DNA of 64,000 nucleotides from Mobula birostris (lineage: Eukaryota), in NCBI RefSeq assembly GCF_030028105.1, contig NC_092398.1:24877649-24941648 (forward strand), read 5' to 3'. Positions 4,116-32,218 of the stretch are shown here, one piece after another. Each line of letters starts with the position of its first letter. The first letter of the stretch is position 1. The notes beneath the pieces are model-generated. The model searched no databases. It worked only from the letters and a program-made list of their open reading frames with translations, and was not told the DNA's origin. Position numbers and translations under genes: made by a program.

Positions 4116-4159
4116 TCCAATGTAAAATTAAGTTGCAATGTAAATTGAAAAGCGTGAAT

Positions 4160-6142: not shown

Positions 6143-6204
6143 CTGAGGAGAAAACGTTGGAGGTTCTGTCGTTGTGTTAAGTCATGTTTCATATCATATC
6201 ATTA

Positions 6205-6835: not shown

Positions 6836-7037
6836 GAACAAGTCTACTTCCTTAAGAGGTGACTTGTTGTGAGCAGCTCCCATGGGAATCATCAAATATT
6901 CCCATTGTTCAGGACTACAACAGCTGAAATGCGTGGTCACGGTTATGGATACTTCAGTAAATAACACATTTCACAACGTATCCCAAAGATATTAAACCTG
7001 ATTCTGTTTTGTAAAGGCATGTTCAATGTACGAGGAG

Positions 7038-9631: not shown

Positions 9632-9750
9632 ACGAGGAGCATTTGATGGGTCTGGGCCTGTACTCACTGTAGTTTTGAAGAATGAACGGAGATCCTATGA
9701 AATATTAGAAGTCCTAGATAGAGTGGATAAGGAGAGGATGTTTCCTATAC

Positions 9751-10915
9751 CTGGGCCTTAGCACTCAGATCTGCAGCTGGATTTTCAACTTCCTCACAGA
9801 CAGAACCCAGGCTGTAAAAATAGAGGACAAGCTCTCCTCTACAACCACTCTGAGCACCGGTGCCCCACAAGGCTGTGTACTCAGCACCCTGCTGTACTCA
9901 CTCTACACCCATGATTGCGTAGCCAAGTTTCCATCAAACTCAATAGATAAGTTTGCTGATGACACAACAATTGTAGGCCGTATCTCGGGTAATGATGAGC
10001 TTGAATACAGAGAGGAAATTAACAACCTGGTGGCATGGTGCGAAGGCAATAACCTATCCCTCTACGTCAGTAAGACGAAAGAATTGGTTGTTGAATTCGG
10101 AAGGAGTAGCGGACCGCCCGACCCAATTTCCATCCATGGTGCGAAAGTGGAACAGGTCAAAAACTTTAAGCTCCTCGGGGTCAATATCACAAATAACCTG
10201 ACTTGGTCCAACCAAGCAGAGTTCACTGCCAAGAAGGCCCACCAGCGCCTGTACTTCCTGAGAAAACTAAAGAAATTTGACCTGTCTCCTAAAACCCTCA
10301 CTAATTTTTATAGATGCACCGTAGAAAGCATTCTTCTCGGGTACATCAGAACCCGGTAGGGAAGTTGTCCTGTCCAAGACCGAAAGAAGCTGCAGGAGAT
10401 CGTGAACACGCCGCAGCGCATCACTCAAACCAATCTTCCATCCTTGGACTCACTTTACACCGCACGCTGTCGGAGCAGTACTGCCAGGGTAACAAAGGAC
10501 ACGACCCACCCAGCCAACATACATTTTTCGTCCTTCTTCCTTCCGGGAGAAGGCTCAGGAGCTTGAAGACTCGTACGCCCAGATTTGCGAACAGCTTCTT
10601 TCCAACTGTGATAAGACTGCTGAACAGATCCTAACCCGGATCTGGGCCGTACCCTCCAAATATCCGGACCTGCTTCTCGGTTTTTTTTGCACAACCTTAC
10701 TTGCCATTTTTCTATTTTCTATTTACGATTTATAATTTAAATTTTTAATATTTACTCATTTTAACTAGATTTACTATTTTAAATATTGAATATTTTTGAT
10801 CCAGGGAGTGTGAAGCGCAGAATCAAATATCGCTGTGATGATTTTACGTTCTAGTATCAATTGTTTGGAGACAATAAAGTATAAAGTATAAGTATAAGCA
10901 GAAGTGTAAGTATAG
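9751..10915 (+). mobile_element. Rex1/Babar LINE, 5'-truncated, pseudogenised
   Basis: [10 protein letters not shown]...YTHDC...[27 protein letters not shown], and tail aataaagtataaagtataagtataag. It splits a CR1 remnant at tttcctata|ggagggg. Confidence 0.9.
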
Positions 10916-11033
10916 GAGGGGAGTCCAGGACAAGAGAGCACTGCCTTGTCATAGAAAGATGTCCATTTAAAACAGAGATGAGGAGGAATTTCTTTAGCCG
11001 GAGGGTGGTGAATGTGCAGAATTTGTTGAGTTC

Positions 11034-11219
11034 TGTTCATTTGGGCTATGTAATTATTTAAGACGCATGCGTACTCTCCCAGTTATACGCGTGCACGCGG
11101 AAGGAAAAAGAGGAACTGTGGGATGTAAAGGTGGCGGCCCTTGGGTATTGAACGGAGACATTTAAAGTAAAGTGGTTTAAACAAAAGGAAAATGTGTCTT
11201 TGCTGTTTGGCCGTTATCA
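11034..11219 (+). mobile_element. Short LTR-like sequence (TG...CA, 186 bp) followed by a Met primer-binding site
   Basis: Starts TGTTC, ends TATCA, contains agtaaa; one base later TGGTAGC... complementary to the tRNA-iMet 3' end. No second LTR or gag/pol seen. Confidence 0.55.
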
Positions 11220-11220
11220 G

Positions 11221-11276
11221 TGGTAGCGGAGGACGGTTACGATCTATCGACCTCTGGGATATGGGCCCTGCGCACT
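11221..11276 (-). pseudogene. tRNA-iMet(CAT)-derived sequence with encoded CCA; non-functional
   Basis: Minus strand gggcccatatcccagaggtcgatagatcgtaaccgtcctccgctacca matches the 3' 48 nt of vertebrate initiator tRNA-Met (reference recalled from memory) at 43/48. A 13-nt D-arm segment is missing; the 5' piece agtgcgca is retained. Confidence 0.85.
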
Positions 11277-11639
11277 ACTGAGCATGTTTGAAGCAGAGGT
11301 CGATAGGTTTCTGATTGGAAAGAACATCAAAGGTTAAGGGGAGAAGTCAGGAGACTGGGGTTAAGAGAGACAATGAATCTGTCACGATTGAATCCCAGAG
11401 TAGACTTGATGAGCCAAATGGCCCAATTCTGCTCCTAGGGTCTATGGTTTTATGGTATATAAGCTGTCTGACTTGATTCTCACAATTGACAGCAGAGAGG
11501 ATGAGAGAGGTCTTGAGCAGTTGGGACTTGCTTCTGGACAGAAACGGGCCACGATGGATTCTGTGTCAAATTGACATCAGTGAGAATACGGTGGTGTTGA
11601 CGGGGTCAGGCGACATTTCTCCAACTTGCCCGTTCTTAC

Positions 11640-11908
11640 CTAGAGGTATCATGAGCTTCCCACTCACAGCCTCGTGTTCCATCTGACAGACGTACCCGTG
11701 ACTGTCTCCATCTAGGGGGCGGACACTCCTAACTTGAAAGGTTCCATTGCTTTGAGGGACAACGTTGGTCGTGTCTGATCCATTGTCAGTGACTTCCCCG
11801 TTTCTGACACAGTGAACTTTAATGTCCCGGGGAAGAAGTTCTTGGCCGTGCACACCGGATATATTTAGCCCCGTTTCTTCTGAGTCAAGGCTCTGGTACG
11901 GGTAGGAG
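11640..11908 (-). pseudogene. C1-set Ig exon, MHC class I alpha-3-like (copy 1)
   Basis: Acceptor ttccttcacag|CT, donor CTAG|gtaaga; 269 nt (270 needed). Motifs VCTAKNFFP(R)DIKVH, RNGEV, PQSNGTFQVRS, YVCQMEH. Lesions: -1 frameshift in ttcttccccggg, CAA>TAA stop, conserved Trp>Cys. Confidence 0.85.
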
Positions 11909-14501
11909 CTGTGAAGGAATTGGAGAACAGTGTATGGGTTCAAAGTAGCTCAGCTCTCTTGTGACTGGACGGTATGGACAGAACTTCACCCTGTGTCTGA
12001 CCCCGCGAGTATGTGATAGCACAGTGTACAGGGGGCTTCACTCTGCATCTAATAGCTAGTGGGACCTTGTCCACATTACCACACTCGGCTTTAAGAAAGC
12101 CCCCTGTTTAGCCAGGGCATCAAACGGTATGGGGAGAAGGCAGGGAAGTGGGGATGACTGGTAGAATTGCATCAGCCTATGATAGAATAGCAGAGCGGAC
12201 TTGATGGGCCGAATGGCCTGCTTCTGTTCCTATACCTTATGGTCTTATGGTCACGGGGAGAGCATTTGAAGTCAGACATCAAACATACAGACATCAGTGT
12301 AAATCGAACCCCGATCAATAATCACAGGCACGATAGAGCAATTCTGCTATCTGCTACGATAACGTGCAGTCCCTGATTGTGTTAATTAGACAGTTTAGAT
12401 TAACCTTTGTTTGTAATGTACACTTCTGCTGCTGAAAAAATTGATTTTGATGGTATTTATACTGATTGAGGCCCTCTGTTAGTCCAGGTTGACCACGGTG
12501 TCCTAGCTGTCTGCAAGATACGCAGCATGGTACACAACTCAGAGCCGTTGCCGACACAACAGGCTCCCCCCCTCTCCATGCTGCTGATAAAGCCAAAGGA
12601 ATGCCAGAGACTGATACAGTTTCAGCGAAGGTTTGAGATCAGACTTTTCCTTCTCTTCGATGGGATGCTGACCACAGCTGATGAGCCCCATCTGCCTGAA
12701 GCGATTGATTTTAAGGGACCAATAATCCACCTTTGCCCTTTCCCCTGTTATTAGAAATGGTTCTGCTGGGCTTAATAGCTAAGCCACATGTGAAGTTCCA
12801 GGAGCTAGACTTCGATGTCAGAGGCTATTTGAGCTGTGCACCATTGGGAGCTCATTCCAACTACCTTCCCAGGCTTTAACGACCTTAAGGAATTTGTATT
12901 TATAAGCTGTGCATCTGTTCCCATGATAATAAACTTGAACAAGAGAGAATGAACAGCAGAGGGGGCTATAGGGCAATGCTTACTCCAGACATCTGTCAGG
13001 AATGGCAGATGAAGTTCAATTCAGATAAATGCAAGGTGTTATATTTTCATGGATCAAACCAAGGCAGGGCATACACAGTGAACAGGCAAGTCCTGGTGAG
13101 TGTTGCAGACACTGTTCTCTCTCACCTGTATGTGTCTGCGACCATGCAGTAACTGTAATGCTCCCGCGCACATAGCCGTTGCTACTGCGCAGCTGAAATT
13201 CTCTTTTATATAATGTTAGTATAATTTTGAAATGATGCCAATATAATTTTGGAATCTATGTTAACATAATTCAGAAATACCCTGCAATTAATTATGTTAA
13301 TGAATATAGTTTATTAATTTTCTAAATAGTAAACATACCACACACTTTGAAACATTTTAGAGTTTCAATGCATTTACATTGTCAATGTTACAAGTTACAA
13401 CACTGTTACAAATTGTAACAATGAACACAGAATGGAAGGCGGCAGCTCATTGTTAATAAACTGCCGGCCTGCTGAAAGTTGATGCTGTCATATTCATGTT
13501 AAAAAAAACGATTTAAAGTGCCAGGTAGTTTTCAGAGCAGTGGTTAGTCCACACAGTGGTAAAAATAATTGGAGGGAAGGTCGGTTGTAGAACAGAGAGA
13601 CCAGGGTGTGTTGGTACATAAAACCATAAAGTGACGACACGGACAGGGAGGTAAAGAAGGTGTTTGTACACGTGCCGTCATCGGAAGGGCACTGAATACA
13701 GGAGTTGGGATGTCACGTTGTAACTGTACAAAGACTTCAAAGACAAAGTAACAAAGTACGCATCCTGTAGTGGGCTGGGTTGATCAGACCGAAACTAATC
13801 GAGTGTCCGGCAAATGTAATAAGTAAACAGATCCGACAAAGAAACTTAAGCCCAATTTATTATCACAAAAATGGAAAGGCACGCAAAATACTCCGTACCA
13901 AGTCACAAAGATTCCAGTGCTCACAATTCTTAGTGACCAGTTGATTGTTGTTGGGAGAACTGCGAACTCCAACTCGCTCGTGAAATCATCCTGGGTCGTA
14001 GGCATCGAAAGCGGTTTCCAGTCTAAAGAATCCAGGGAAAATTGTTCCAGTAAACAGGAGATCCACAAACGTAGAGAGAGACACACAGAGACAGACAGAT
14101 GCCTTGATCTTTTGCCCTCCTGCCATTAACCCAGCCTGGTTTCCTTCATTCATTAACGCAGTGTTCAGCATACCCTTAACATAGAACATAGAACATAGAA
14201 TAGCACAGCACAGTACAGGCCCTTCGGCACACAATGTTGTACCGACCCTCAAACCCTGCCTCCTATATAAGCCCCCACCTTAGATTCCTCCATATACCCT
14301 TACTAATCAGTTGGACACTGTAATGGTCAGTCTTTATCCATCAGTCCACCAATGTTTAGGACTTAACGTTCCTTGAAATTACGGACGATTAGTGTATCTT
14401 AAATGCCCTGCCTCTTCCCACTTTAAATGCCCTGCCCTCAATACCCTATAAACCTTTACGTGCCTAAAGGCTTCTAAATGCCTAACTGCCCTGCTTTTCA
14501 T

Positions 14502-14534
<33 letters not shown>

Positions 14535-15050
14535 TTCATCATCAGTCCGATGAGCCCTGAGCCCAGACTCTCGTTTTGTGGCCACTGTCCACGGCTCTCT
14601 GGGTAACCGAGACATTTCCTCCAGCCAAGATAGCGCCGAGTTTCAGTCTCTATCGAGGTTGTGGCTCAGACTGAAACTGATATCGTAGGTTCGTATCAAT
14701 GTTTTTGGTGACAGAGGGAGGTTTCACTGGTCAGGTTAGGATTTAGCGACAGGAATGTGGGGCAATTAGAGATCAGGCCAGGTCTAGGGCTTTACTCCAC
14801 GAGCGAAGGCCACAGATGACGTGAATGAAGGACTTTCATGGATGAGTGTCCAGTTGGCGAACATGTTGGACAAAGACTAGCTGGTTATCCTCCACACCCT
14901 GGGTCAGTCAGTTCGCTATATAAGCAGTGTGATTGGACGTCGAGGAGGGCTGGTGGCCCCTTAGCTACTCTAGTTGGTGTGTCTGGAGTAGGGCTCTAAT
15001 GCCATCGATGAGGCCGGAGTACGAGGACTGAAGTACAGGGTCCCATCATC
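14502..15050 (-). mobile_element. RTE-like LINE 3' fragment with (GAT)n tail ((CAT)n on plus, about 14502-14544)
   Basis: Trinucleotide tail directly after a degenerate ORF end (...SALSWLEEMSRLPREPWTVATKRESGLRAHRT-DDD). Clade assignment is tentative. Confidence 0.45.
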
Positions 15051-17779
15051 ATTGTGCCGTGCGGTCATGGACTGAAGGTCGATCGCGAGTCTGGAAATTG
15101 AGACCCGATGGCCTCCGACGCTGGGTCACCAACAGCCCCAGCCAGCCGGCCTTTCCTGGGTTTGGAGGACGGTCTGTGTGTGCGGGCGTGCGTGGCGGGT
15201 CAGCGGGTGAGAGGGAGGTACAAGGTTTCCTTTGCTGTTGTTCTGCTGAATGTGGTGGGCAAGCTACGTCGGCGTCAGAATGTGTGACAAGACTGGCGGG
15301 CTGCACCCAACACAGCCTACTGGTTGTTTCGATGCACACACACAATATATCAATCAGTCTGAATCTGGGGCCGTGACCCACTTCTGGAGCGAGCTGAGAT
15401 TAAGATCTCAGAAGCCGCTCTTGGAGTCTTCGGGAACTGCTACGCTGTGGGAGACGGTAGCGATGATGTGAAGGCGCAGCGAGGGAAGGGCACTGCCGGG
15501 GCGGGTGGGGAATGGTACCGAGGGATTGCGGCACTGCGAGAAGAGCGGGGAAATATGGCACTGCTGAGCTTTGTCAGGAACGCCACTCTGATGCAGTCTT
15601 CTAGAGTAGACGCTGCAGGTTCACATCAGCAAGTCAGGAAACAGTTGTATAAAACTTTGGAATGGGTGCACTTGGTTTAACTGTGTGCAGTTCTGACCAT
15701 TCCATTACAGGAAAGATGCGGAGGAGTGGAGTTTACAGAGAAAATAGAACACATCACAGCACAGAAAAGGTCGTGCGGCCCACAATGTAATTTGGAAGGT
15801 TCGGGGGTGGAATCTCATTGAAACCTTTCAAATGTTGAAAGGCCTAGACAGAGTATATGTGGGAAGGATGTGTCCCATGGTAGGGGAAGTCTAGGACAAG
15901 AGGGCACAGCCTCAGGATAGAGGGGCATCCATTTAAAACAGAGATGTGCAGAAATTTCTTTAGCCAGAGTCTGGAGAATTTGTCGAATCTGTCAGCTGTG
16001 GAGGCCAGGTCGTTGGGTGGATTTAAGGAAGAGCTTGATAGGTTCTTTACTGGACACAGCATCAAAGGTTACGGGGAGTGGGGCTGTCGCGGGGGGGGGG
16101 GTGGATCAGCCATGATTGAGTGGCAGAGCAGATTTGATGAGCCAAATAACATAATTCTTCCCCCATGTGTTAGGATGTTATGTTATGTCCAGCTATTTAC
16201 CTACTCTAAGATTAATCCAACCCTTCCGTCCTACATAGCCCTCCATTGTTCTATCATCCATTTGCCTGTCCAAGAGTTTCTTAAATGTCCCCAAAGTATG
16301 TGTGTCCACTACCACCCCGCTGATGCGTCCCGCGCACCCACCACTCTCTGTGTGAAAAACCTACCTCTGACATACCCTCTATACTTTCCTCTAATCTCCT
16401 TAAAATTATACCCCATCATATTAGGCATTTCCGCCCTGAGATAAAGCCTCTGGCTGTCCACTCGATCGATGCATATTATCGTCTTGCGCACCTCTATCAG
16501 GTCACCTTTATCAGGTCCTTTGCTGCGGAGAGAAAAGCCCCAGCTTTCTGAACCTGTCTTCATGCGACATGCTCTCTAATCCAGGCAGCATTCTGGTAAA
16601 TCTTCTCTGCACCCTCTCTAAATGAAGTGGTCTGAACTAAACACAATGCTTCAAGTGTGATCTAACTGGAGTTCTGTGGATATGAAACATTATCTGATGG
16701 ATCTGAAACGTAATCCTCCGACTGATGACGGCCAATACTCCTTATGCTTTCTTCACCGTTCTCTCGCCTTGCTACCGACTTTGAGGCATCTATGGGCTCC
16801 GTCTCTGTTCCTCCGCACTGCTAAAAGTTCTGACATAAACTCTGCCTTCAAGTTCAACCTTACAAAGTGAGTTATTTCACACTTTTCTGCGTAACACTCT
16901 GAGGTGTCAGAGTTCAGTGAATCAGCGATGACAGACTCTTTGGAGAGGGTGCAGAAAATGGGGCAAGTACGACTCAAGGGTTGAAACGGCTTCTAGATGG
17001 GCACGGGATAGAGGTACAGGAGCAGTATGACTTGGTCTGGCAGCATGGGCACGGACCTCATCTCTCTGGCTGTGAAACTGCAGAGGACCCTGTCACCACC
17101 GGGGTCTCATCACAAAGACAACAGCCGTTTACAGTTTACTGTTTACCGTTTACCTCTGTTGAGCGCTGCACCGACATTGAATTATACTTATAAACTTAAC
17201 TGTGGCAATATTTTGTGTCATGCGCTGTGTATGATGTATATTTTGTATGTTTCCGTGGTCCCGGGGAGCAATGCTTCGTTTGATCGTATATATGTACCGC
17301 CAGATGATAACAAATGTGAACTTGAGAAGGAGAAAGGATAAGTGACGTGTAGAAGTTAAATATATCATGCACTGCGTGATTGTTGACTGGAAATCGTTGT
17401 CATACAGACTCATAGATGGTGATTTAAAGGAACATCTGAAAATATATGGACGGACACAAACGCAAGCGAAGGCTGGGGTGACAAGTGTATTTACCTATGA
17501 CAGGATTGTGTTGAAAACTTGGCAGATGAAGGTTAATCCCGAATCAGTGGCCTGCTACACACTGTGCGTGGGGTGAGGTTAAATGCAATCATAAAGTATT
17601 TATTGAATGGACTGGATGCTTGGAAGTGTTAATGAACAGTCGGAACTTTGGCTGGACCTCCATGTCTTTCTGAATGTAACATGGCACGGAGAGATGTTGG
17701 TAAAGAAGGAGTAAGCATCCTTCTCTTAAATGGTCGTATTTTTAGTGATGTTCAATAAGTCTTGCAGCAACTGCGTGAA

Positions 17780-18230
17780 TGATTGAACGTCGATATCTCC
17801 GACTTCCAGTTCATTTTCCCCCTCTATTTTCCATTACTTTAATTCTCCACTCTGCCCCCACTTACTTCCTCTCTCTTCTCCCGGCGCATTTCCTCCGCAT
17901 ACTGCCCCGTTCCTCTCTCCTGTGATCCACTCGCTTTTCCGATCTGATCCCTTCTTCTGCTATTTGTCTTCCACTTATCACCACCTAACATTGCTTCACA
18001 CCCCTCTGGTATTCACTACTTTAACTGCCACGTTCTAGTCTGTACACATTCTCCTCCGTCCACCTCATTACTCTGATTTCTTTCCTCTTCCTTTCCAGTT
18101 TCGATGAAGGGTTCCGGAAAACTCGACTGTTTATTCATTTATATAGATTCTGCCTGAGCTAATGACCCCCCACGATTTTGTATGCGCTGCTGAGGATGCT
18201 TAGCATCTGCAAAATCTCTTCGCTGCAGAC
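17780..18230 (+). mobile_element. Degenerate Penelope-like element terminal region
   Basis: Pyrimidine-rich tract followed by a decayed hammerhead-like cgatgaagggttccggaaaactcgact (18098-18127) and an agcatctgca end, similar to the clean fragment at 58724-58855. Confidence 0.55.
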
Positions 18231-18639
18231 ATACGCACATTTGGACCGTCGTTCATTTGGTCTTCTAAGCATCACTTAGACAGATTATTGATTAAGCAGA
18301 GATTGACCATGGAGACGCACATGAGGAGTTTCAATTAGGGTTATTGTTGGCACCCCAATCATGTGCCGAACGGTCTATTCCTGTGCTGGACTCATCTGTA
18401 TTCATCATTTTCACCCACGTATTTATAAAATTGAGTTAAGTGCGGATTCTTTGATACGATTACTGGGCCAGACAGCCCTGTTTCCCATACTTCTTGAGAG
18501 ACAAACAGAATGATAGAATGCGGCATACAACTGCTGATATTTATTCCGCGACATAGAAGCTAGTCGTTTTTAAAGGAGCGGGAAGTTGAGGGAGGAAGTT
18601 ACATTTTAAGACTATATTATTTTTTTTTTATTTATCGAT

Positions 18640-18820
18640 ACAGCAGGGTTGCAGGGGTTCCCACCAGAACCTTCACGTCTTTGGAATGTGTATGCAACAG
18701 AGGCATCTGGAGTAAACCTCCGCCGTCGCCGATAGATCGTACAAAATTCATAGAGACGGCTGTGGGGACTGAAAGCGCGCCTCAGGCGCTGTGAAGCATT
18801 GTGCCGACCACTACGCTACG
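18640..18820 (-). mobile_element. tRNA-derived SINE remnant downstream of the GPCR stop codon
   Basis: Degenerate pattern ...gcgctgtgaagcattgtgccgaccactacgctac, with an A-rich tail on the minus strand. A similar remnant lies near 12255-12365. Confidence 0.45.
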
Positions 18821-18853
18821 TTTAATTGGTGGACTTAGTTTCCGATTAGCTTG

Positions 18854-20843
18854 TCACACCAGGCGAGAGAATGGAGATTTCAACACCTCCCGCATCTGCT
18901 CCCTGAACTTCTTCTGGGTCAAGGCGTAAAGAGCCGTGTTTGTGCAGCAGCTCAGAAGCTGCAGCATGTAGCCCAGCTCCCTCATGGTCGAAGGTGGGAA
19001 CAAGGCATACCTCAGATATGATAAACGAAAAAAATATGATCGTATCCACACAGTATGCACAACAAAAACCACCCACAACACGATGAAATTCGCCGACACG
19101 ACCAACAGTAAAATGAGCGACTTCCTCCGGCTTTGCATCTCCGGGTCTTTGGAGCCATCCCCATTGCTGTTATTCCGGAGTCTCCTCCGAGATCTGCTCG
19201 CCACTACCACGTGTCTGATGGTCAAAGCATTGAGCAGCAGAACGACCACAAACGGGATCACAGGCGTCAGAAAGAAGCTGCAAGACTCGACTACTGTCCA
19301 TGCAACTGAGAACAGAACACCGTCTCTTCCGTGGCAAAACCAAGGGACGTTATTAAACTGGTAGCGTCCTGAGAGCAAAAAATACCAGAAAATGTTCTTT
19401 AAACAGCTCAGGGCGGCCACAGTCCACAGAACAACAGCCGCGGTTCTCTCGGTGCAGTATTTAGCTTTCAGATTCTGGCAGCGAATAGCCACGAATCGGT
19501 CGAAGGTGAACATGACGGTGAACCAGACGGAGCAGTCGTTGGCTGTGTAACGTAGGACGGCGTGGATATTACACACGGGGATGTTCATCAGGAATATAAA
19601 CGCTCCCCAAAAAACAATAGGAATCTGCCTCAATACCAGGTCAAAGACAACAACGAGAAGATCCGCCATTGCCATGGCCATCAAGTAACGAGCGACGCCT
19701 TTCGAAAGACCGCACTTTCCCTGAGACAGGACCACAATCGTCAGCACGTTCACTATTGGGATTGAAAGAAACACAAGCATGTTTGTGGGCAAGGAATACT
19801 GTCAGCACAGTCACAGACAGAAAGTATAGAAACATGTTTTTGAACGCAGAATGGAAGACTGCGGTTTTACAGCATCCGTGATGCCTGCTGGTGACGAGGA
19901 TTATAGCTCAGTGAAATCGACAAAGAACTGGAAAATAACGTCACAACGCCAAACAACGAACAGCTGAGAAAATGTGCTCTCGGATTTCGGTGAAGATGAA
20001 TTTGAAATAGGGCTCGAAATTGGTCATTGAATTGGAATTGCTTTACTATTACGGAAGTGGCATCACAAGGGTACAGGGAAACACGCGTCTCCACAATATG
20101 CATACAGATCAATTCTTTACTCAGTGCTTTGAGGCGTGACGTAATATCAGCTCAGGCTCTCCACTTCTTCTGCCGGTCTTTTAAATTTATACAATATTTC
20201 GGAAGCCATCCATTTTAAACTGCAATCCAAATTGGGAGTTCGGTATCTAAAGCTGCAAGGGAGGCTTACTCAGTTGAAAATTTTAAACGCCAGCTCAGAA
20301 GATCTTTATTTAACCTTGATTTTAAAAGGAATTATTTTGTCTGCTCTTTTCATGTTATTTCTGTTTGTATTATAAAAGCACATTAAAACTTCGCCTATTT
20401 GGAAAGTGCTCTAATTATTATTATTATTATTTTTATTGTTGCTGTTTTTGTTGTTGTGATTGTTGTTGTTTAAAGAAAAAAAAAACAGGGAGATAAATGT
20501 TATTGACCGAGTCTGTCAATGTATTACAGGATCATCATCAAAAGTTCAGTTAGTGAGGACGATGGACTGCGTTAACCGGAAAATATCATTAAATTGCAAA
20601 CTATCAAATCTGTTTACAGGAACCCGTGATCACTGCTTCTCCTTCTCTGGTCAGCAACTTACCGGGAAATGCAACCAAAGCGAGAAGGGGATAGTAGATG
20701 GGCTGAATTGTCCGGAGTAAATACCAGATCCGTCTGTCTGCTGGTATCCAAGGGTCATTCGAAAAAATATAGGGAGCCAGGCTGAAGACACCCTTCTCTG
20801 TCCCTGGAACATTCCATGTTCCTATTTCTCGTTCCTGAACCAT
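18854..20843 (-). CDS. Two-exon GPR139/GPR142-like class A GPCR, 359 aa; join(complement 20663-20843, 18854-19752)
   Basis: Exon 1 MVQEREIG...IQPIYYPLLALVAFP ends CCC G|gtaagt; exon 2 starts tcccaatag|TG AAC giving PVNVLTIVVLSQGKCGLS. Seven hydrophobic segments, ADLL in TM2, DRF, ECL2 PWFC, TM7 CCTNTALY. ATG context GGCAATGG; no stops. Confidence 0.9.
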
Positions 20844-21299
20844 TGCCCGTCACCGTTCCCAGATTCCAGTCGGTGACCGGCGGTTCTCACGCTGCACATG
20901 TGACCGTTCACGTAAAATTCCACTTTGATGTTCGCAGTTCCCCAATTTTTGTCTTCCGCTGTCGAGCCACTGCGGTCCGTGTGTGACGGAGGGGTTGTTC
21001 TCGCTAACACTATGAAACTTAATCGAAAGGAGCAATTTTAAATAGAGCTGCTAATCCCCCAGTGAGACAACCAGGCTCCATACGGGCTGACGTTAATTAA
21101 CATACATCTACGGTTAACCCCTTTGGATCCGGATCGCGGGTGCCAAAGGTAAAACGAATTATTAAACAGGGTGGTGATGTCTAGGATATATGTCCACCGA
21201 TCTCGGACATTGGTTCTGCATTATCTTGCAGGAGACAGAATAGCCTGCAAGCACGTACCATTTGGCTCAGTAACAGCTTCAATCACGACATTATTAAAA

Positions 21300-21930
21300 T
21301 ATTCAACCCTTCCCCCTGACGATTAGATGGACTCTTGATATGGCAATCTGCCTCACTCTGACTTTGCAATTTGTTGTTCCCTTGCGCCGCACCTTCTCTG
21401 TAACTGCAGCACTTTATTCTGCATTCTGTCATTGTATGACCCGGAAATCAATGCACTGAGGCAATCATTCTTTTTTTTTGAATGAGGAGTGTGTAAAACA
21501 AGGTTGTTTTCTTTTCCCAGCATCGACAAATACAATGAAGTCCCGTGTACCATCAGTGTCCCACCAGGCAAGATGCTGCGCAGCGTCCTCACCAGGACCA
21601 GCAGTATCTAAAACAGTTACTTTCTCCAGACAGTAAGGTTGATCGACACTTATACCGACCAACACATTCCACCAGCTCCCTCTACCATCCAACACCACTA
21701 CCTTATCATTTCCTATCAGTAAACATGTGAACAGCCCTTAGAGTCACGTTGTAGACATATCAATCTCTGAATATGAACTATATATGTATTTATATTCATT
21801 GTCCTTTTTATTACTGTGCTCTTTGCCCTATTGTGTTTTTTGGCGCTGCAATGGATCCGGAGTAACAACTGTTTCGTTCTCCTTTGCGCTTGTGTAATGG
21901 AAATAATACTGAACAATTCTGAATCTTGAA
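21300..21930 (+). mobile_element. Rex1/Babar-like 3' end remnants
   Basis: accaggaccagcagtatctaaaacagttactttctcc (RTSSI*NSYF-like) and a 3' UTR ending in aataataaa. Boundaries approximate. Confidence 0.5.
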
Positions 21931-22239
21931 TAATAAACCCATTTACTAATTGAGCACTCTGCAGTGTGATGGACCAATCGGTTAGAGAGCCGCTTGCAGG
22001 TCTGATGAAAGGCTCAGAGGGGATCCTTTCTTTCGACGGGAGGAGGCTGATGGAAACCTTGCAACTTTGCTCCAGCTAATCTGACGTCACTGCGTCGGCG
22101 ATGAAGGAGTGGTTCATGTTGTATCGGATGAGTGACAATTCGGAAATTATGCGGTCGAAATTGCTTTATTTATGAAAGAGATTTGGACCAAATCTGTATT
22201 AAAGTTCAACATATATTAAATCCCGTTTAAACGCCCATC

Positions 22240-22620
22240 CACTCGACTGAAACAATGACAACAAACACAGACTGTTGGAGGAGCTTGGCAGTTCAGGCAG
22301 CCTATATGGAAGTGAATAAACAGTGGACGTTTCCGGTCGAGAACTTTCATCTGGACCGAAGATGAAGCAGGTTCACGCCAGAAGAAATGGTGAGGGAGGC
22401 GATAAGAAATACAGACCGGTATGAGATACTTGTAGCCAAGTGAGCGGGTAAATGGGTGGGTGGGGAAGAGGGATGAAGTAAAGACGTTGTAGTTGATATT
22501 TGGAAAAAATAAGAGCAAGAGAAGAAGGAATCTGATAAGAGAGGGGAATAGACCATGTGGGAAATTGAAGGAGGTGGTCACAAGGGGGAGGTGATCTGCT
22601 TGTGAGGGAATGAAGGAAGA
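22240..22620 (-). mobile_element. Penelope-like element terminal region (degenerate)
   Basis: acaaacacagactgttggaggagcttggcagttcaggcagcctat end, hammerhead-like gtggacgtttccggtcgagaactttcatctggac (22323-22356), then a purine-rich tract. Confidence 0.6.
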
Positions 22621-23754
22621 GTGGTGTCAGAATGGATAATTGAAGAAATGGGAAGGGGAAGGGAGAAAATTATCGGAAAACATTAAAACATTGACATTTT
22701 TCTTTTTATGCACCTACCATATCAAAAATATTTCCACGATTAAACCGGTTAGTACATCTGATGTGCTGCGTTTGGATCACATCGCAGGAAAATATAAGCC
22801 AGCCTACCAATATTTCGTCATAACCTGCAACCCAACAGATTGCCCAGAGATTTTCCTCCGCAATGCTTTGCATCCTCCTGTACAATGGTGACCAGAATTA
22901 CCCACAGTACTCTAAAAGCGGGCAACGTACTGTTATGCACATATCTTCATTATGATGCTATAATTTGTGGGTTCAATACCTCACCCTGGGTCCCTTTCAC
23001 TTTCCAGTTTTACCCTTTATACTCACAGGTACGCCCTGTCCTTCGCCTGTTGATCACTATGTTAACACTCTCTCACTCGCCGTCTCTTCTTTCTGTTCGA
23101 CTGCTGCTAGTTGTTGACGAAATGTCTGGATATTATCCCTGCTCTAGTTTATGGGCACAACGCTGTGAACCTTCATCGTTATTCGCGCCTGTGTTTCCTT
23201 TTCTTACAATTCTCCACCCTCTCTATCCTTACCCTCTCTCCTTGTCCCTGACTCCCACTCTCTCTCTCTCTCTAGCTGTGCTCCAGACCCCCTTGCTGTG
23301 TTAGCATCCATTGTGCGCACACCAGACAGCAGTACAAATGGGGCTCTATGTTGAGGGATGTGTGCACACAAAACAAACAAGCGCACAGCGGCGGTGTGGA
23401 GAGGACTCAAGTGCACTGGGGGCAGTTTTCGGATGTGTCTGTACAGACCGGACCAGTTAACGATGAAATTTCTTTTGACACACCTGCCATTGGAAAACAT
23501 ACTTCCGTGATTAATCCCGTCAGTACATTTCATCAACTGATGTATTTCCTTCGGGTCACCTTGCACGGAAGTTACGATCAACCTGTCCAATAGAGAGAGT
23601 CGTGGTGTAATAGAAAAGTACAGCACAGGAGAAGACCCTTCGGCCAATCTAGTCTGAGCCGAACTAATTAAACTTCTACTCCCCTCGACCTACACGCCTA
23701 TCACAGCCCTCCCTAACCCAGGCATCCGTTTATCTATCCAAGCGTATCTCAGAC

Positions 23755-24912
23755 CAGAGGTTCGCAACCATGGGGCCGCAGATCGGTACCGGGCCGCAAA
23801 GCATGTGCTACCGGGCCGCGAGGAAACCTTTCCTCATTCCTTGTCACGTACTTTTGAGCCATTACGCATGCGAGGTCATTAACCGCGCTTCATCCATCTC
23901 ACCGCGGGAAGGAGATCAATTCCCCGAGCTTGCAAATGACGGCAGGCTGAAAAGTATGTTTGACATAACATCTCAGCCAGCATTCTAGATCAAAATCAAG
24001 GCTAGATAACCTGAGATAGCCACGAAAGCACTGAAAACGCTGCTTCCATTTCCAAACTATCTCTGCGAAGCAGGCTTTTCTGCAATGAATGCAACGAAAA
24101 CTAAATTGCGGAATAGACTGGACATAAGTAACCCCCTACGAGTACCGCTGTCTCCCATCACCCCCCGATAGGACCGTCTCCTTGCAGGGAAACAAGCCCA
24201 GGGCTCCCAATGATTCACCGATATTGGTGTGTTGCAATGATTCTATATGTTCATACGGGGAAAATATGTGCTGTGTGTTTAATATCCAAACGTTACTTAG
24301 AATGTTATGATGCTATTGACTTATATAACCACATAACAATTACAGCACAGAAACAAACCACCTCTGCCCTTCTCGTCCGTGCCGAACGCTTACTCTCACC
24401 TAGTCCCAACGTTCAGCACTCAGCCCACAACCTGTCCTTTCCTGTCCATATATCTATGCATTTTTTCTATAAATGATAATATCGAACCTGCCTCTACCAC
24501 TTCTACTGGAATCTCCTTCAACACTTACTTCAAGCTCCCCTGTCCTCCCCTGATAACTGATTTATCACTATATTCATGCGAGGAAAATATGCGCTGTGTG
24601 TTTAATATTAAATTCGCCAGATAAACCCTTTTAGAAAGGAAATTGAGTGTAATAGGCACTTATTACCGATATTCCGGATGTGGTTCCCCCGCACCGCCGA
24701 ACAGAATCGCCAAAAGCAATTTGTAGGGGAAAAAATCGTCACGTAAACGCATTCGCACTGGTGTCCGCGCAAGGCTTCATTCTCATTGAAGTCTTTTTCG
24801 GGTAAACACAACGTATTTGTCTGCTACTCTTGTCCGTTGCCAATCCTACTCCCCACCACCACTCCAGCCCCCCAGTCGGCCGGTCCGCAGTGCAAAAATT
24901 TGGGGACCCCTG
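23755..24912 (-). mobile_element. Non-autonomous hAT Charlie/Buster-type element
   Basis: Ends cagaggttcgcaacc ... tttggggacccctg. Buster C-terminus on plus (YLCEAGFSAMNATKTKLRNRLDI...KQAQGS). No matching TSD. Confidence 0.8.
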
Positions 24913-25234
24913 ATCGTTTGCAGTGCTTTGCTGTTTGAAAGAAGATTCCAGGAAGTGAGTGCAAACTCGAACGGCCTTAAAGTGAAACAGTTTAGAGGTG
25001 GTGCCCCAGCCAATGATAGACTCCATTTCGCCGATTAAAGCATCGAGGAAGATTGAAATCAAGGCGAGTGCAGAAAAGGAGTGAGGGTTTAAAACTGACT
25101 GCTGTTTGATCGCAGGGACGGATCTCTCTGTTGTCAGATGAGTTGTGTAGTACCTTTCACTCACTGTTACCGGAGGGTAGGCCTCTGTGCTTCAGTGGTC
25201 TCTCTATCTCTATCTCTTGACGTTGGTCAGAGGA

Positions 25235-27900
25235 CATAAGCCGGGTAGATGTGGAATCGATATGGGTAGGGCTGCGTAACACTAAGGGGCAGAAGACGGT
25301 GATGGGAGTTGTGTACAGGCCACCTAACAGTAGTAGTGAGGTCGGAGATGGTATTAAACAGGAAATTAGAAATGTGTGCAATAAAGGAACAGCAGTTACA
25401 ATGGGTGACTTCAATCTACATGTAGATTGGGTGAACCAAATTAGTAAAGGTGCTGAGGAAGAGGATTTCTTGGAATGTATGCGGGATGGTTTATTGAGCC
25501 AACATGTCGAGGAACCAACTGGAGAGCAGGCTATTCTGGACTGGGTTCTGAGCAATGAGGAAGGGTTAATTAGCAATCTTGTCGTGAGAGGCCCTTTGGG
25601 TAAGAGTGACCATAATATGGTGGAATTCTTCATTAAGATGGAGAGTGACATAGTTAATTCAGAAACAAAGGTTCTGAATTTAAAAAGGGGTAACTTTGAA
25701 GGTATGAGACGTGAAATCGCTAAGATAGACTGGCAAATGACACTTAAAGGATTGACGGTGGATATGCAATGGCAAGCATTTAAAGGTTGCATGGATGAAC
25801 TACAACAATTGTTCATCCCAGTTTGGCAAAAGAATAAATCAAGGAAGGTAGTGCACCCGTGGCTGACAAGAGAAATTAGGATAGTATCAATTCCAAAGAA
25901 GAAGCATACAAATTAGCCAGAAAAAGTAGCTCACCTGAGGACTGGGAGAAATTCAGAGTTCAGCAGAGGAGGACAAAGGGCTTAATTAGGAAGGGGAAAA
26001 AAGATTATGAGAGAAAACTGGCAGGGAACATAAAAACTGACTGTAAAAGCTTTTATAGATATGCAAAAAGGAAAAGACTGGTAAAGACAAATGTGGGTCC
26101 CCTACAGACAGAAACAGGTGAAATGATTATGGGGAGCAAGGACATGGCAGACCAATTGAATGATTACTTTGGTTCTGTCTTCACTAAGGAGGACATAAAT
26201 AATCTTCCAGAAATAGTAGGGGACAGAGGATCTAGTGAGATGGAGGAACTGAGCGAAATACATGTTAGTAGGGAAGTGGTGTGAGGCAAATTGAAGGGAT
26301 TAAAGGCAGATAAATCCGCAGGGCCAGATGATCTGCATCCCAGAGTGCTTCAGGAATTAGCCCAAGAAATAGTGGATGCATTAGTGATAATTTTTCAAAA
26401 CTCTTTAGATTCTGGACTAGTTCCTGAGGATTGGAGGGTGGCTAATGTAACCTCACTTTTTAAAAAAGGAGGGAGAGAGAAACTGGGGAATTATAGACTG
26501 GTTAGCCTAACATCGGTGGTGGGGAAAATGCTAGAGTCAGTTACCAAAGATGAGATAACAGCACATTTGGAGAGTGGTGAAATCATCGGACAAAGTGAGC
26601 ATGGATTTGTGAAAGGAAAATCATGTCTGATGAATCTCATAGAATTTTTTGAGGATGTAACTACTAGAGTGGACAGGGGGAGAACCAGTGCATGTGGAAT
26701 ATTTGGATTTTCAAAAGGCTTTTGACAAGGTCCCACACAGGAGATTAGTGTGCAAACTTAAAGCACACGGTATTGGGGGTAAGGTATTGACGTGGATGGA
26801 GAATTGGTTAGCAGACAGGAAGCAAAGAGTGGGAATAAACGGGACCTTTTCAGACTGGCAGGCGGTGACTAGTGGGTACCGCAAGGCTCAGTGCTCGGAC
26901 CCCAGTTGTTTACAATATATATTAATGACTTGGATGAGGGAATTAAATGCAGCATCTCCAAGTTTGCGGATGACACGAAGCTGGGTGGCAGTGTTAGCTG
27001 TGAGGAGGATGCTAAGAGAATGCGGAGTGACTTGGATAGGTTGGGTGAGTGGGCAAATTCATGGCAGATGCAATTTAATGTGGATAAATGTGAAGTTATC
27101 CACTTTGGTGGCAAAAATAGGAAAACAGATTGTTATCTGAATGGTGGCCGATTAGGAAAAGGGGAGGTGCAACGAGACCTGGGTGTCATTATACACCAGT
27201 CATTGAAAGTGGGCATACAGGTACAGCAGGCGGTGAAAAAGGCGAATGGTATGCTGGCATTTATAGCAAGAGGATTCGAGACCAGTAGCAGGGTGGTACT
27301 ACTGCAGTTGTGCAAGGCCTTGGTGAGACCACACCTGGAGTCTTGTGTGCAGTTTTGGTCCCCTAATCTGAGGAAAGACAACCTTGCCATAGAGGGAGTA
27401 CAAAGAAGGTTCACCAGATTGATTCCTGGGATGGCAGGACTTTCATATGAAGAAAGACTGGATGAACTGGGCTTGTACTCGTTGAAATTTAGAAGATTGT
27501 GGGGGTATCTGATTGAAACGTATAAAATCCTAAAGGGATTGGACAGGCTAGATGCAGGAAGATTGTTCCCGATGTTGGGGAAGTCCAGAACAAGGGGTCA
27601 CAGTTTGAGAATAAAGGGGAAGCCTTTTAGGACCGAGATTAGGAAAAACTTCTTCACACAGAGAGTGGTGAATCTGTGGAATTCTCTGCCACAGGAAACA
27701 GTTGAGGCCAGTTCATTGGCTATATTTAAGAGGGAGTGAGATATGGCCCTTGTGGCTACGGGGATCAGCGGGTATGGAGGGAAGGCTGGGGCGGGGTTCT
27801 GAGTTGGATGATCAGCCATGATCATAATAAATGGCGGTGCAGGCTCGAAGGGCCGAATGGCCTACTCCTGCATTAATTTACTATGTTTCTATGTTTCAAT
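25235..27900 (+). mobile_element. 5'-truncated CR1 LINE (2.67 kb), EN-RT pseudogenised
   Basis: ESIWVGLRN, VYRPPNS, GDFNLH, LGKSDHN (EN); RT motifs; ctatgtttctatgtttc tail. Empty site in the paralog at 51401-51420 (ggtcagag|gatattacc); at most a 2-bp GA duplication. Confidence 0.96.
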
Positions 27901-28290
27901 GATATTACCGGGGCTCTGCATTTATGCACTGGACGATGGAGTTGTTCAGTCTTATGATGTTTATATTCTCTGTTTTCGTCAGTTATTTCTCGTTATTGTG
28001 TGGCGTGTTTTGTTACTTCTTTGTGTGATAGAAAGGAGTTTGGAGTTTGATGTTCTGGTTCTTGACAGGTTTTTTTTGTGTGCGTGTAGGTTTTGATGTT
28101 TATCTTTGAATTATTTCCATGCATTTCTTTGTACTGTGGCTATCTGGAGAAGCCAAATCTCAGAGTTGCACACTGAGTACATAATTTAATAATAAATGAA
28201 CCTTTGAACGATTTTTGATGCCTGACGGGGCGATTTGTGTATCTCAGAGAATGTTGAGCTCATGGGATTATCAGGCACGAGTCTCTAGAG

Positions 28291-29481
28291 CAGGGGTCCC
28301 CAATCTATTTTGCACTACGGAGCGGTTTAATATTGACAATAATCTTGCGGACCGGCCGACCGGGTCGGGGGTGGGTAGGGTTGCCAACATACAAGAGCAG
28401 CAGTCAAATACATTGTGTTCACCCGGAGAAAGATTTCAATAACCATGAAGCCTCGTGCGAGCACCAGTGCGCATGCATTTACGTGCAGATGTTTTTTCCC
28501 CTACAAATTCCTTTTGGCGATTCTGTTCGGGGCATTTGGGGTTTGTTAACCACGACCGGAATATCGGTAATAACTGCCTAATACACTCAACTTTCTTTCT
28601 AAAAGGGTTTATCTAACAGACTTAATATTAAACACACTGCGCATATTTTCCTCATATGAATATAGTGATAAGTCAATTATCAGGGGAGGACAGGGGAGCG
28701 TGAAGTAAGTGTTGAACGAACTTCCAGTAGAAGTGGTAGAGGCAGGTTCGATATTATCATTTAAAGAAAAACTGGAAGGGTGTATGGGTTGGAAAGGGAT
28801 TGCGGGTTGTGGGCTGAGTGGAGATCGGTGGACTAGGTGAGAGTAGCGTTCAGAGCGGGCTAGACGGGCAGAAATGGCCTGTTTCCATGCTGTAATTGTT
28901 ATATAGTTATATAAGTCAACAGCATCATAACATTTTAAGTAACGTTTGGATATTAAACACACAGCACATATTTTTCCCGTATAAACATATAAAATCATTG
29001 CAACACACCGATATCGCTGAATCAGTGGGAGCCTTGGACTTGATTCCTTGCAAGGAGACGGTCCTGTCGAGTGGTGATGGGAGGCAGCGATACTCGAAGC
29101 GGGGTCCTTATGTCCAGTATATTCCGCAATTTAGTTTTCATTGCATTGATTGCAGAAAAGCCCGCCATCGCAGAGATACTTTGGAAATGGAAGCAGTGTT
29201 TTCAGTGCTTTCGTGGCTACCTCAGGATATTTAGCCTTGGCTTTGATCCAGAATGCCGGCAGAGATGTTAGGTCAAACATACTTTATAGTCCGCCGTCAT
29301 TTGCAAGCTCGGGGAGTTGATCTCCTTCCCGCCATGACATAGACGATGCACGGTTAATGACCTCGCGTGCGTCATGGCTCAACAGTGCGTGACTGGGAAT
29401 GAGGAAAGGTTTCTTCGCGGCCCGCCGGCACATGCTTTGCGGCCAGGTAGCGGTCCGCGGCCCGGTGGTTGGGGACCGCTG
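28291..29481 (+). mobile_element. Charlie/Buster-type element (copy 2), plus inverted left-end fragment to 29743
   Basis: Same TIRs and CTCTAGAG left flank as 2214-3404. Confidence 0.8.
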
Positions 29482-29743
29482 GCCAAAATAAAATTCTAGT
29501 GAGTGGAGGGGAATCTGCATGTAAACGCATGTGCACTGGTGCCCGCGCAAGGCTTCATGGACATTGAAGTCTTTCTCGGGGTAAACTCGACGTATTTGAG
29601 TGCTATTCTTGTCCGTTGGCAACCCTACTCCCCACAACCACCCGCGCCCCACCCACTCCCCCCCGCCGCCGTCGGCCGGTCCGTAAGAATATTGTCAATA
29701 TTAAACCGGTCCACAGTGCAAAAAAAATGTTTGGGGACCCCTG

Positions 29744-31612
29744 CATTCATCCCTACTCTTTTTTTCCTCTCTGTCAACCAATTTTCTATCCCTGTCAGTA
29801 CCCTACCCCCAATAACATTTGCTCTAATTTTGCACACTAACCTCGAAGTGGCTTTCTGAAAGTCCAGGTACAGTACATCCACTGGCTTTCCCATATCCAT
29901 TTTAAAAGTTACATTCACAAAAAAAATCCAGAAGATTAGTCAAGCATCATTTCCCTTTCGTAAATCCATGCTGACTCGGACCTATCCTGCCACTGCTATC
30001 CAAATATTCCACTTTTGCATCTTTTATACTTAATTCCAGTATCTGCCCCACCACTGATGTCAGACTTACTGCTCTATAATTGCCTGCTTTCTCTCTCCCT
30101 CCTTTCTTAAAAAGTGGGATAACATTAGCTACCCTCCAATCCGTAGGGGCTGATCCTGAATCTATAGAACATTGGAAAATAGTTACCAATGCGTCCAATG
30201 TAAAATTAAGTTGCAATGTAAATTGAAAAGCGTGAATACAGGACTGAAGGTGTCATATCTGAAAGCGCGCAGTACACTAGAATAAGGTCGATGAAGTTGT
30301 AGCACAGTTAGAGATCGGCAGGTATGATGTTGTAAGCAGCACGGAATCATGGTTAAAGAAGATTATAGCTGGGAGATTAATGTCCAACGGTACACATTGT
30401 ATAGAAAGGACAGGCAGAAAGCCAGAGGAGCCAGTATTCTTCTGTTCGTAAAAAATGTAATTTAATCATTAGAAATGGTTGACATAGGGTCGGCAGGTGT
30501 TGAATCATTGTGGATAGAGCTTAGAAACTGCAAGGGGTATAAAGAGCCTGATAGGAGTTTTATACAGAAACCCCCAAAAGGATCAAACGGGGTATAGAAA
30601 ATGCATTCCAAAAGGGTAACCTTACAATAGTCATGGGGGATTATAATACGTAGGTAGATTGGGTTGCTGAGGGATTCCAAGGGGGAATTTCCAGAATGCC
30701 TATGGGATGGTTTTTCAGAGCTGCTCGTGGTTGAGCCACGAAAGGAGAATCTATTGATGTTGTGTACTTGGGTTTTCAGAAGGCCATTGACAAGGTGCCA
30801 CACGTGAGGCTGCTTGGTAAGCTACGAGCTCATGGTATTACAGGAAAGATTCTAGCATGGATAAGGCAGTGGCTGACTGGCAGGAGGCAAAGACTAGGAA
30901 TAAAGGGGGCTTTTCTGGTGGCTGCCGGTAACTACTGGTGTTCCACGGGGTCTGTGTTAGGACCGATTCTTCTTACATTATATGTTAATGATTTGGATGA
31001 TGGATTTAATGGCTTTGTTGCAACATTGCAGACGATACGCACATAGGTGGAGGGACAGATAGTTTTGCAGAAATATAGAGGCTACAGAAGTACTTAGACA
31101 TATTAGGAGAATGGACAAAGAGGTGTCAGGTGGAATACAGTGTCGGGAAGTGTTTGGTCATATACTTCGATAGAAGAAGTGAAAGGGTTGACTCTTTTCC
31201 AAGTGGAGAGAAAATACAAAATCTGAGGCACAAAGGGACTTCGGAGTCCTTGTGCAAGATTCTCTGAAGCTCAATTTGCAGGTTGAGACTGGTGAGAAAG
31301 TCAAATGCAATATTAGAATTAATTTCAAGAGGACAAGAATATAAAAGCAAGGATGTAATATTGAGACTTTATAAGGCACTGGTAAGGCTTCACTTTGCGG
31401 TGAATCGGTGGATTTCGTTGCCACAGGCGGCTGCGGAGGCCAAGTCTTCATATATATTTAAGGCAAAGGTTGAAAGTTTCTTGATTGGTCAGGGCATGAA
31501 GGGATACGGGGAGAAGGTAGGAGATTGAGACTGAAAGGATAAACACATCAGTCATGATAAAATGGCAGGGCAGACTCAACGGGTCAAATGGCCTAATTGT
31601 GCTCCTATATTT
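29744..31612. mobile_element. CR1 remnants (minus RT fragment, then plus internally deleted CR1), copy 2
   Basis: Duplicate of 3667-5535. Confidence 0.85.
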
Positions 31613-32104
31613 AGTGGTTTTGTCGTCAATGATTTGCAGAGTGTTGATGCACTCGAACTGTACCATCGGCTTCAGAGGACGATGGAGACAGGCATTTATC
31701 GATGGCCTATGCCCAGGTGAGTATGTAAGGTGAGTGAGTAAGGGTGTCAAAGGTGACAGGGAGAAAGTAGGAAAATGGAGTTGATGGGGGCATTAAATCA
31801 ACCATGATGGGGTGATGGAGCAGGCTCGATGGGCTAAATGGCCTAAACCTGCTCCTCGGTCTTATTCTCACTGAGCAAAAACAGCCTCGTCCCTTCCTTC
31901 AGTTTTTTTTTGAACCCAACCTTGTTATTCTATTTTTTACACTTCTTAGTTATTCTAAACATTTATAGTAATCTTTTTATGTCTTTGCTCCGACCTTCAC
32001 GTCACAGAAGTCAGTGATGATAAATCTGATTTGAGAATAGCGCAGAGACGGTTTCCCAGCTTAATCCACATTGATGAAGCTCTGTCAGCCTCTCAGCCAC
32101 TTGC

Positions 32105-32218
32105 CCTTTGACGTGCAGCAGTACAAGATTCCAGTCACCACCATTGCGCACAGCCCGAGTATCCCCAGGACAGCTCCAACAATCATCAAAGCTTCATTCT
32201 CAAACAGTGCGTTGTGTT
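32105..32218 (-). pseudogene. TM exon of MHC class I-like remnant (copy 2)
   Basis: Same reading frame and GC donor as 6029-6142. Confidence 0.8.

What the first reader, a model, noticed from the sequence alone, without database searches (positions are those of the whole stretch)
19725..19870. 26-kb tandem duplication whose junction lies inside the GPCR: a probable exon-1-swapped chimeric receptor
Seen: 1-19820 matches 26078-45894 almost perfectly, then 10 substitutions appear within about 50 bp from 19821/45895 and roughly 5% divergence persists. The switch is at the 3' end of the GPCR intron, about 70 bp from the exon-2 acceptor. Inference: unequal crossover between two older paralogs (U0, U1) gives exactly this pattern. 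The gene at 18854-20843 would have promoter, exon 1 (N-terminus and TM1) and intron from U0 but exon 2 from U1, while 44928-46917 is native U1. Both are open and spliceable, so this would be a newly born hybrid receptor.
Basis: partly seen in the sequence, partly recalled or inferred. Interest (0 to 1): 0.7.

Follow-up and report, generated by a model that had tools for sequence, protein, structure and literature searches.

The report
Hybrid receptor gene from array duplication
In a ray genome, two neighbouring 26-kb repeat units are almost identical up to a point just inside an orphan receptor gene and about 5% different beyond it, the ordinary footprint of unequal crossing-over that left one receptor copy with an older first exon and a younger second exon.

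Summary
Observation confirmed. Window 1-25244 aligns to 26078-51421. The maximum-likelihood change point is 19820: 0.55% substitutions to its left (109/19820, 9 gap columns) and 5.3% to its right (287/5424, 149 gap columns).

The switch lies 69 bp upstream of the exon-2 acceptor of a minus-strand, two-exon GPR139-like class A GPCR. Both copies are intact (359 aa) with identical canonical splice sites. They differ at five residues in exon 1 and one in exon 2.

The window holds part of an older array. A third partial unit (from 51411) is 4-6% from both copies. One LINE insertion site is filled in front of units 1 and 2 and cleanly empty in front of unit 3, so the young event copied more than 20 kb including the LINE. 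This favours a one-period unequal crossover over gene conversion.

The decisive prediction is a near-identical twin of 19821-26077 about 6.3 kb upstream of the window. I could not read that region. Short-read contigs show a third, copy-1-like version of the right part, which is suggestive only. No RNA evidence was found.

The mechanism is textbook (Lepore or opsin-type hybrid genes), and the functional change is small. Other scan notes describe mosaic units elsewhere in this array.

The parts
1..19820 (.). Young segment, copy 1 (a1'): 99.45% identical to 26078-45894
26078..45894 (.). Young segment, copy 2 (a1)
19725..19820 (.). Breakpoint interval in copy 1 (homologous to 45799-45894). It has no differences, lies between the last sparse difference (19724) and the first dense one (19821), and contains the exon-2 acceptor
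19821..25244 (.). Old segment of copy 1 (b0'): 5.3% substitutions and 149 gap columns against 45895-51421
45895..51421 (.). Old segment of copy 2 (b1)
18854..19752 (-). GPCR copy 1, exon 2 (second half of TM1 to the stop codon; Pfam 7tm_1)
19753..20662 (-). GPCR copy 1 intron (phase 1, GT..AG), splitting TM1
20663..20843 (-). GPCR copy 1, exon 1 (N-terminal tail plus first half of TM1); 75% identical over 60 aa to Hemitrygon akajei P0006
44928..45826 (-). GPCR copy 2, exon 2
46737..46917 (-). GPCR copy 2, exon 1
25245..27900 (+). LINE insertion (endonuclease ORF 25251-25916, reverse transcriptase ORF 26891-27739) between units 1 and 2
1..1823 (+). 3' part of the same LINE at the same insertion site in front of unit 1, cut by the window start
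51411..51421 (.). Empty LINE target site (GATATTACCGG) at the unit 2 to unit 3 junction
51411..62868 (.). Third, older partial unit: 4-6% from both units 1 and 2

Best explanation
The window lies inside a long tandem array of roughly 26-kb units in a mobulid ray. Each unit carries a two-exon GPR139-like orphan GPCR on the minus strand. The older units are about 5% diverged. A recent unequal crossover (non-allelic homologous recombination) between two misaligned neighbouring units, resolved within 19725-19820 at the intron/exon-2 boundary of the GPCR, added one unit. The middle unit (window copy 1) is the recombinant: its left part, including GPCR exon 2, comes from the downstream parent (copy 2 type), and its right part, including the intron, exon 1 and promoter, comes from the upstream parent. 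Shown here: the step in divergence, its position, the intact gene models, the older third unit, and the shared LINE. Inferred: that copy number rose by one, that copy 1 rather than copy 2 is the recombinant, and that the gene is used.
For: There is a sharp tenfold step in divergence at 19820, with no indel scar. Units are in direct orientation, and a third unit is 4-6% from both copies, which matches the 5.3% of the right part. Differences between copies 1 and 2 are derived in both copies, 36 to 32. A LINE with endonuclease and reverse transcriptase ORFs occupies the same site before units 1 and 2 at about 99.3% identity, while the site before unit 3 is cleanly empty. The young event therefore carried at least 20.6 kb including a 2.66-kb insertion. 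This is far longer than the usual vertebrate gene-conversion tract (general knowledge). Short-read contigs of the probable source sample contain copy 1's exact right-part version (21096-21311, 0 differences at 9 diagnostic sites). They also contain a third, copy-1-like version with copy-2 letters at 21986/21991 and copy-1 letters at 21992/21994. Leads not tested here: scan notes place more units upstream and downstream. One upstream note ends 5235 letters before the window, which is where a GPCR start codon exactly one 26,077-bp period upstream of 20843 would fall.
Against: The predicted twin of 19821-26077 lies outside the window and was not read. The third version seen in contigs differs from copy 1 by about 1.35% over about 1.55 kb, more than the 0.55% expected for a same-age twin. 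It could instead be the other haplotype, another unit, or a mosaic contig. No depth or spanning-read evidence was available. The left part is not uniformly 0.55%: dispersion index is 2.7, there is a 2,053-bp tract with no difference at 16090-18143, and 15 substitutions fall in 11106-11442. Some gene conversion therefore also operates in the array.
Confidence: 0.62

Rival explanations
1. Long-tract gene conversion, or repeated conversion, homogenised the left 20 kb of two pre-existing old units without adding a unit. The GPCR is still a mosaic, but no new gene was born, and either copy could be the converted one.
For: It gives the same step in divergence. The heterogeneity within the left part (a zero-difference tract at 16090-18143 and a cluster at 11106-11442) shows that conversion-like processes act in this array.
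Against: The tract would have to exceed 20.6 kb and carry a 2.66-kb LINE into a previously empty junction. Differences are otherwise spread fairly evenly at about 0.55%, as expected from a single event.
Confidence: 0.15
2. Assembly artefact: two haplotypes, or two units, of a hard repeat were laid in tandem or joined wrongly, so the 26-kb duplicate does not exist on one chromosome.
For: Divergence of 0.55% is within the range of allelic differences in some species. The array is highly repetitive. I had no depth or spanning reads.
Against: There is no gap in the window. If the window is the manta assembly, as inferred, it is a hifiasm Hi-C haplotype-resolved HiFi assembly, and a difference about every 180 bp is easily resolved by such reads. 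Both versions of diagnostic sites occur in the reads. An allelic reading would still need a recombinant haplotype to explain the tenfold step, so the hybrid junction would survive; only the copy count would change.
Confidence: 0.12
3. The step reflects different evolutionary rates, with a fast-evolving 5' half under diversifying selection, rather than different ages.
For: Five of six exon-1 differences change the amino acid.
Against: The 5.3% divergence and the indel load extend over 5.4 kb of intron, promoter and transposon sequence. Exon 1 (3.3%) is less diverged than its flanks. The change is abrupt to the base.
Confidence: 0.02

Closest known systems
Hybrid genes from unequal crossing-over in tandem arrays (haemoglobin Lepore/anti-Lepore, red/green opsin hybrids, CYP11B1/CYP11B2 chimeras; ant odorant-receptor arrays, PMC6211649; chicken BG genes, PMC4046983)
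   Same: Direct tandem paralogs, a breakpoint at homologous positions inside the gene without a scar, and a product that joins the 5' part of one paralog to the 3' part of the other.
   Different: Here the second parent lies outside the window, so reciprocity is not shown. The parents differ by only about 5%, so the hybrid protein differs from its neighbour at six residues.
Human GPR139 (solved structures 7VUG and 9M42)
   Same: Class A (rhodopsin-type) 7TM receptor. It is the best solved relative and the name NCBI gives to the ray and shark homologues.
   Different: The score is only 38 bits (E = 1e-8), barely above muscarinic receptors at 30 bits. The ray genes belong to a very large elasmobranch-specific expansion (2123 hits) and are not orthologues. 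Ligand and tissue are unknown.
Annotated elasmobranch 'probable GPR139' genes (P0001 Mobula hypostoma, 95%; P0006 Hemitrygon akajei, 72%)
   Same: Same family and the same TM1-splitting intron. P0006 carries a collinear exon-1 sequence.
   Different: P0001 is annotated as a single exon starting at an internal ATG (window equivalent 19780) that lies in the intron's 3' end. If that form is the one made, the whole coding sequence sits in the young part and only the promoter is swapped.

Membership tests
Class A (rhodopsin-type) GPCR, Pfam 7tm_1 | Match to PF00001 above the gathering score | tested here: met
   55.8 and 58.2 bits against a cut-off of 30.5 for both exon-2 ORFs
Class A (rhodopsin-type) GPCR, Pfam 7tm_1 | Seven hydrophobic segments and a DRY-type motif after TM3 | tested here: met
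   The hydropathy scan gives about seven segments. DRF is at residues 144-146 (FDRFVAI), and NTALY stands in place of NPxxY
GPR139 orthologue | Close sequence relationship to vertebrate GPR139 | tested here: not met
   Only 38 bits to human GPR139 chains. The gene is one of thousands of lineage-specific paralogues
Elasmobranch GPR139-like expansion | High identity to annotated members and a shared two-exon structure with the intron in TM1 | tested here: met
   60-95% identity to ray and shark members. The exon 1/exon 2 join ...ALVAFP|VNVLT... matches P0006, P0015 and P0021
Unequal-crossover (NAHR) hybrid gene | Direct tandem paralogs with an abrupt, scar-free switch of affinity inside the gene | tested here: met
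Unequal-crossover (NAHR) hybrid gene | The other half of the hybrid is near-identical to the other parent (the upstream unit) | not testable with these tools
   The region lies about 6.3 kb upstream of the window. The contigs show a third copy-1-like version, but it cannot be placed
Unequal-crossover (NAHR) hybrid gene | Copy-number gain confirmed by depth or spanning reads | tested here: inconclusive
   Only Logan contigs of short-read runs were available, and the tool states that depth is not usable

The most novel reading that the evidence does not exclude
The TM1 intron of this receptor family may be a recurrent recombination point. Array members would then repeatedly exchange the N-terminal exon and promoter against the 7TM exon, a modular shuffling that builds receptor and expression diversity across the hundreds of elasmobranch GPR139-like genes. 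Scan notes on another piece of this genome (s1-145330) and on neighbouring units (s1-146388, s1-146389) report similar mosaics, but I tested only this one junction.
Probability: 0.12. Interest if true: 0.55.

Novelty: new member of a known kind. Interest (0 to 1): 0.25.

Why it matters
It is a clean, base-level example of how a large orphan receptor family in sharks and rays grows. Whole 26-kb units are added by unequal crossing-over, and the crossover can fall inside the gene and recombine its exons. It also warns annotators that a 'variable first exon, constant second exon' pattern in these arrays reflects different ages rather than selection. The mechanism is textbook, the protein change is small, and expression is unshown.

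Tried and rejected
1. Fetching the Mobula hypostoma locus of P0001 to look for orthologous or upstream units returned no DNA because the file is too large.
Rare variants are dropped (at 19999 only G is seen although both assembled copies have A). Depth is declared unusable and the tables are truncated (230 further sites not shown), so neither copy number nor the twin could be settled.
3. The RNA run search found no listed run holding exon 2. This is not evidence of silence.
4. Scan notes by words and by negative coordinates gave no sequence-level detail on the upstream unit.
5. Using unit 3 as an outgroup for the right part was not possible, because its GPCR region lies beyond the window end.
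6. The cluster at 11106-11442 is not a simple conversion patch from the unit-3 type, because the letters alternate between copies.
7. Literature searches found no paper on the elasmobranch GPR139-like expansion.
8. I considered testing N-terminal versus 7TM discordance in the protein database but dropped it. Clustering at 90% identity collapses exactly the young pairs that would be needed.

Full report
**Observation**

A gapped self-alignment shows that window 1-25244 matches 26078-51421 at 97.8% overall. Along that alignment, substitutions run at 0-8 per 500 bp up to 19500, with one bin of 15. From 20001 to 25000 they run at 16-35 per 500 bp.

A two-rate likelihood scan puts the change point exactly at 19820. 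Divergence is 109/19820 = 0.55% to the left and 287/5424 = 5.3% to the right, with a likelihood ratio of 479. Gap columns rise from 9 to 149.

The last isolated difference is at 19724. From 19821/45895 there are ten substitutions in 69 bp.

**The gene**

The minus strand carries a 312-codon ORF (18854-19792) that matches Pfam 7tm_1. It is 60-95% identical to more than 2,000 'probable GPR139' proteins of rays and sharks. The best hit is Mobula hypostoma P0001 at 95%.

An upstream ORF starting at ATG 20843 ends at a canonical donor (CCCG|GTAAGT, exon 1 = 20663-20843). A polypyrimidine tract and AG at 19754-19753 give an exon 2 that starts at 19752. The spliced product is 359 aa in both copies, and the splice signals are identical.

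The join ...ALVAFP|VNVLTIVVL... is the one found in annotated full-length homologues. Exon 1 is 75% (copy 1) and 78% (copy 2) identical over all 60 residues, without gaps, to the N-terminus of Hemitrygon akajei P0006. Exon 1 is therefore a real, conserved coding exon. It encodes the extracellular tail and the first half of TM1 (hydropathy).

The two proteins differ at T9P, E16G, P34Q, R37I and L53V in exon 1 and at C152Y in exon 2. Exon 1 is 3.3% diverged at the DNA level, less than its flanks, so the N-terminal differences reflect age and not accelerated evolution.

P0001 is annotated as a single exon beginning at an internal ATG. That ATG corresponds to 19780 in the window, inside the intron's 3' end. 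If that form is used, the whole coding sequence lies in the young part.

Human GPR139 is the best solved relative, but only at 38 bits against 30 for muscarinic receptors. 'GPR139' is therefore a nearest-hit label for a lineage-specific family. No listed RNA run holds exon 2.

**Context**

The window is part of a larger array.

- **Third unit.** A third partial unit begins at 51411 and matches 1824-12045 of unit 1 at 90-95%. In three-way alignments, units 1 and 2 differ by 0.6-0.9%, and each differs from unit 3 by 4-6%. The unit 1 versus unit 2 differences are derived in unit 2 at 36 sites and in unit 1 at 32. The 5.3% of the right part thus equals the divergence of old units, and the left part is about ten times younger.
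- **LINE insertion.** The 2.66 kb between units 1 and 2 (25245-27900) is a LINE, with an endonuclease ORF at 25251-25916 and a reverse-transcriptase ORF at 26891-27739. Its 3' 1.8 kb also opens the window (1-1823), at the same insertion site and at about 99.3% identity.
- **Empty site.** The unit 2 to unit 3 junction has a clean empty site, GATATTACCGG, at 51411-51421. One LINE insertion into one old junction has therefore been copied by the young event.

**Mechanism**

A tandem duplication of exactly one period by unequal crossing-over between misaligned old units gives the order a0 b0 LINE a1' | b0' LINE a1 b1. This matches everything visible: a1' = 1824-19820, b0' = 19821-25244, a1 = 27901-45894 and b1 = 45895-51421.

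The middle unit is the recombinant.

Gene conversion could give the same step. However, the tract would have to exceed 20.6 kb and carry a 2.66-kb heterology into an empty junction. On general knowledge of vertebrate conversion tracts, that is unlikely.

Some conversion does act in the array. The left part is over-dispersed (index 2.7). It has a 2,053-bp tract without any difference at 16090-18143 (P about 5e-4) and a cluster of 15 substitutions at 11106-11442.

**What could not be shown**

The model predicts that 19821-26077 has a twin at about 99.5% identity starting about 6.3 kb upstream of the window. I could not read that region.

Four runs from one sample, probably the assembly's source, hold the stretch, but only as Logan contigs of short-read, Hi-C-like libraries. 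The contigs give four limited results:

- They confirm copy 1's exact right-part version (21096-21311, 0 differences at 9 diagnostic sites).
- They confirm copy 2's versions.
- They show both states of the 2-bp indel at 18620.
- They reveal a third, copy-1-like right-part version. For example, 21858-22116 has 3 differences where copy 2 has 21. It carries copy-2 letters at 21986/21991 next to copy-1 letters at 21992/21994, so real 31-mers of a third sequence exist.

That third version is about 1.35% from copy 1 over the listed pieces. It may be the predicted twin, the other haplotype, another unit, or partly a contig mosaic. The tool states that depth from contigs must not be used, so I draw no copy-number conclusion.

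**Leads from the scan's notes (untested)**

- More units lie upstream (s1-145236, s1-146387) and downstream (s1-145509).
- Mosaic identity is reported in neighbouring units (s1-146388, s1-146389).
- On another piece of the genome, a 'variable exon 1, constant exon 2' pattern was judged a recombination effect (s1-145330).
- s1-145236 ends 5235 letters before the window. That is where a GPCR start codon exactly 26,077 bp upstream of 20843 would fall, which fits a young, indel-free twin. It remains only a lead.

**Artefact**

There is no gap in the window. A preprint describes the manta assembly as a hifiasm Hi-C, haplotype-resolved HiFi assembly (10.64898/2026.10.27.761883). That the window comes from it is my inference.

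A difference about every 180 bp is easily resolved by such reads. Even if the two copies were allelic, the tenfold step would still need a recombinant haplotype. Only the copy count would change.

**Verdict**

This is a real and well-resolved recombination footprint inside a GPR139-like receptor gene. It is most likely the product of a one-unit unequal crossover in an old tandem array. It is an ordinary mechanism acting in an uncharacterised family, with a small change to the protein and no evidence yet of expression.

Noticed in passing
window 23754-24862 and 2214-3405 (also 28291-29482, 49931-51090, 51870-52988): Each unit junction is flanked by inverted 1.1-kb repeats about 86% alike, separated by about 780 bp in the empty junction. 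The LINE sits between the arms. This may be a long-TIR or foldback-type transposon, or a palindromic junction structure.
   Followed up: partly
window 8418-8912 and 59402-60238: ORFs with a hAT C-terminal dimerisation domain occur in units 1 and 3 (and by homology in unit 2). They are a hAT transposon relic carried in every unit.
   Followed up: partly
window 16090-18143: A 2,053-bp tract has no difference between copies 1 and 2, against a 0.55% background (P about 5e-4). It probably marks a later small conversion between the two young copies.
   Followed up: partly
window 11106-11442: Fifteen substitutions between copies 1 and 2 fall within 340 bp. The derived states alternate between the copies, so this is not a simple conversion from the unit-3 type. 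It is unexplained.
   Followed up: partly
window 19780 (and 45854): An in-frame ATG in the intron's 3' end gives a single-exon ORF (MLVFLSIPIV...) whose hydrophobic start could replace the first half of TM1. NCBI models the Mobula hypostoma homologue P0001 this way. Two alternative forms of the receptor are conceivable.
   Followed up: partly
window 19821-19889: Ten substitutions fall in the first 69 bp after the switch (P = 0.003 at the 5.3% rate), followed by 169 bp with none. This is a locally hyper-diverged patch right at the breakpoint.
   Followed up: no
window 63588-63822: A C/T-rich 62-bp tandem repeat of about 3.5 copies lies near the window end.
   Followed up: no
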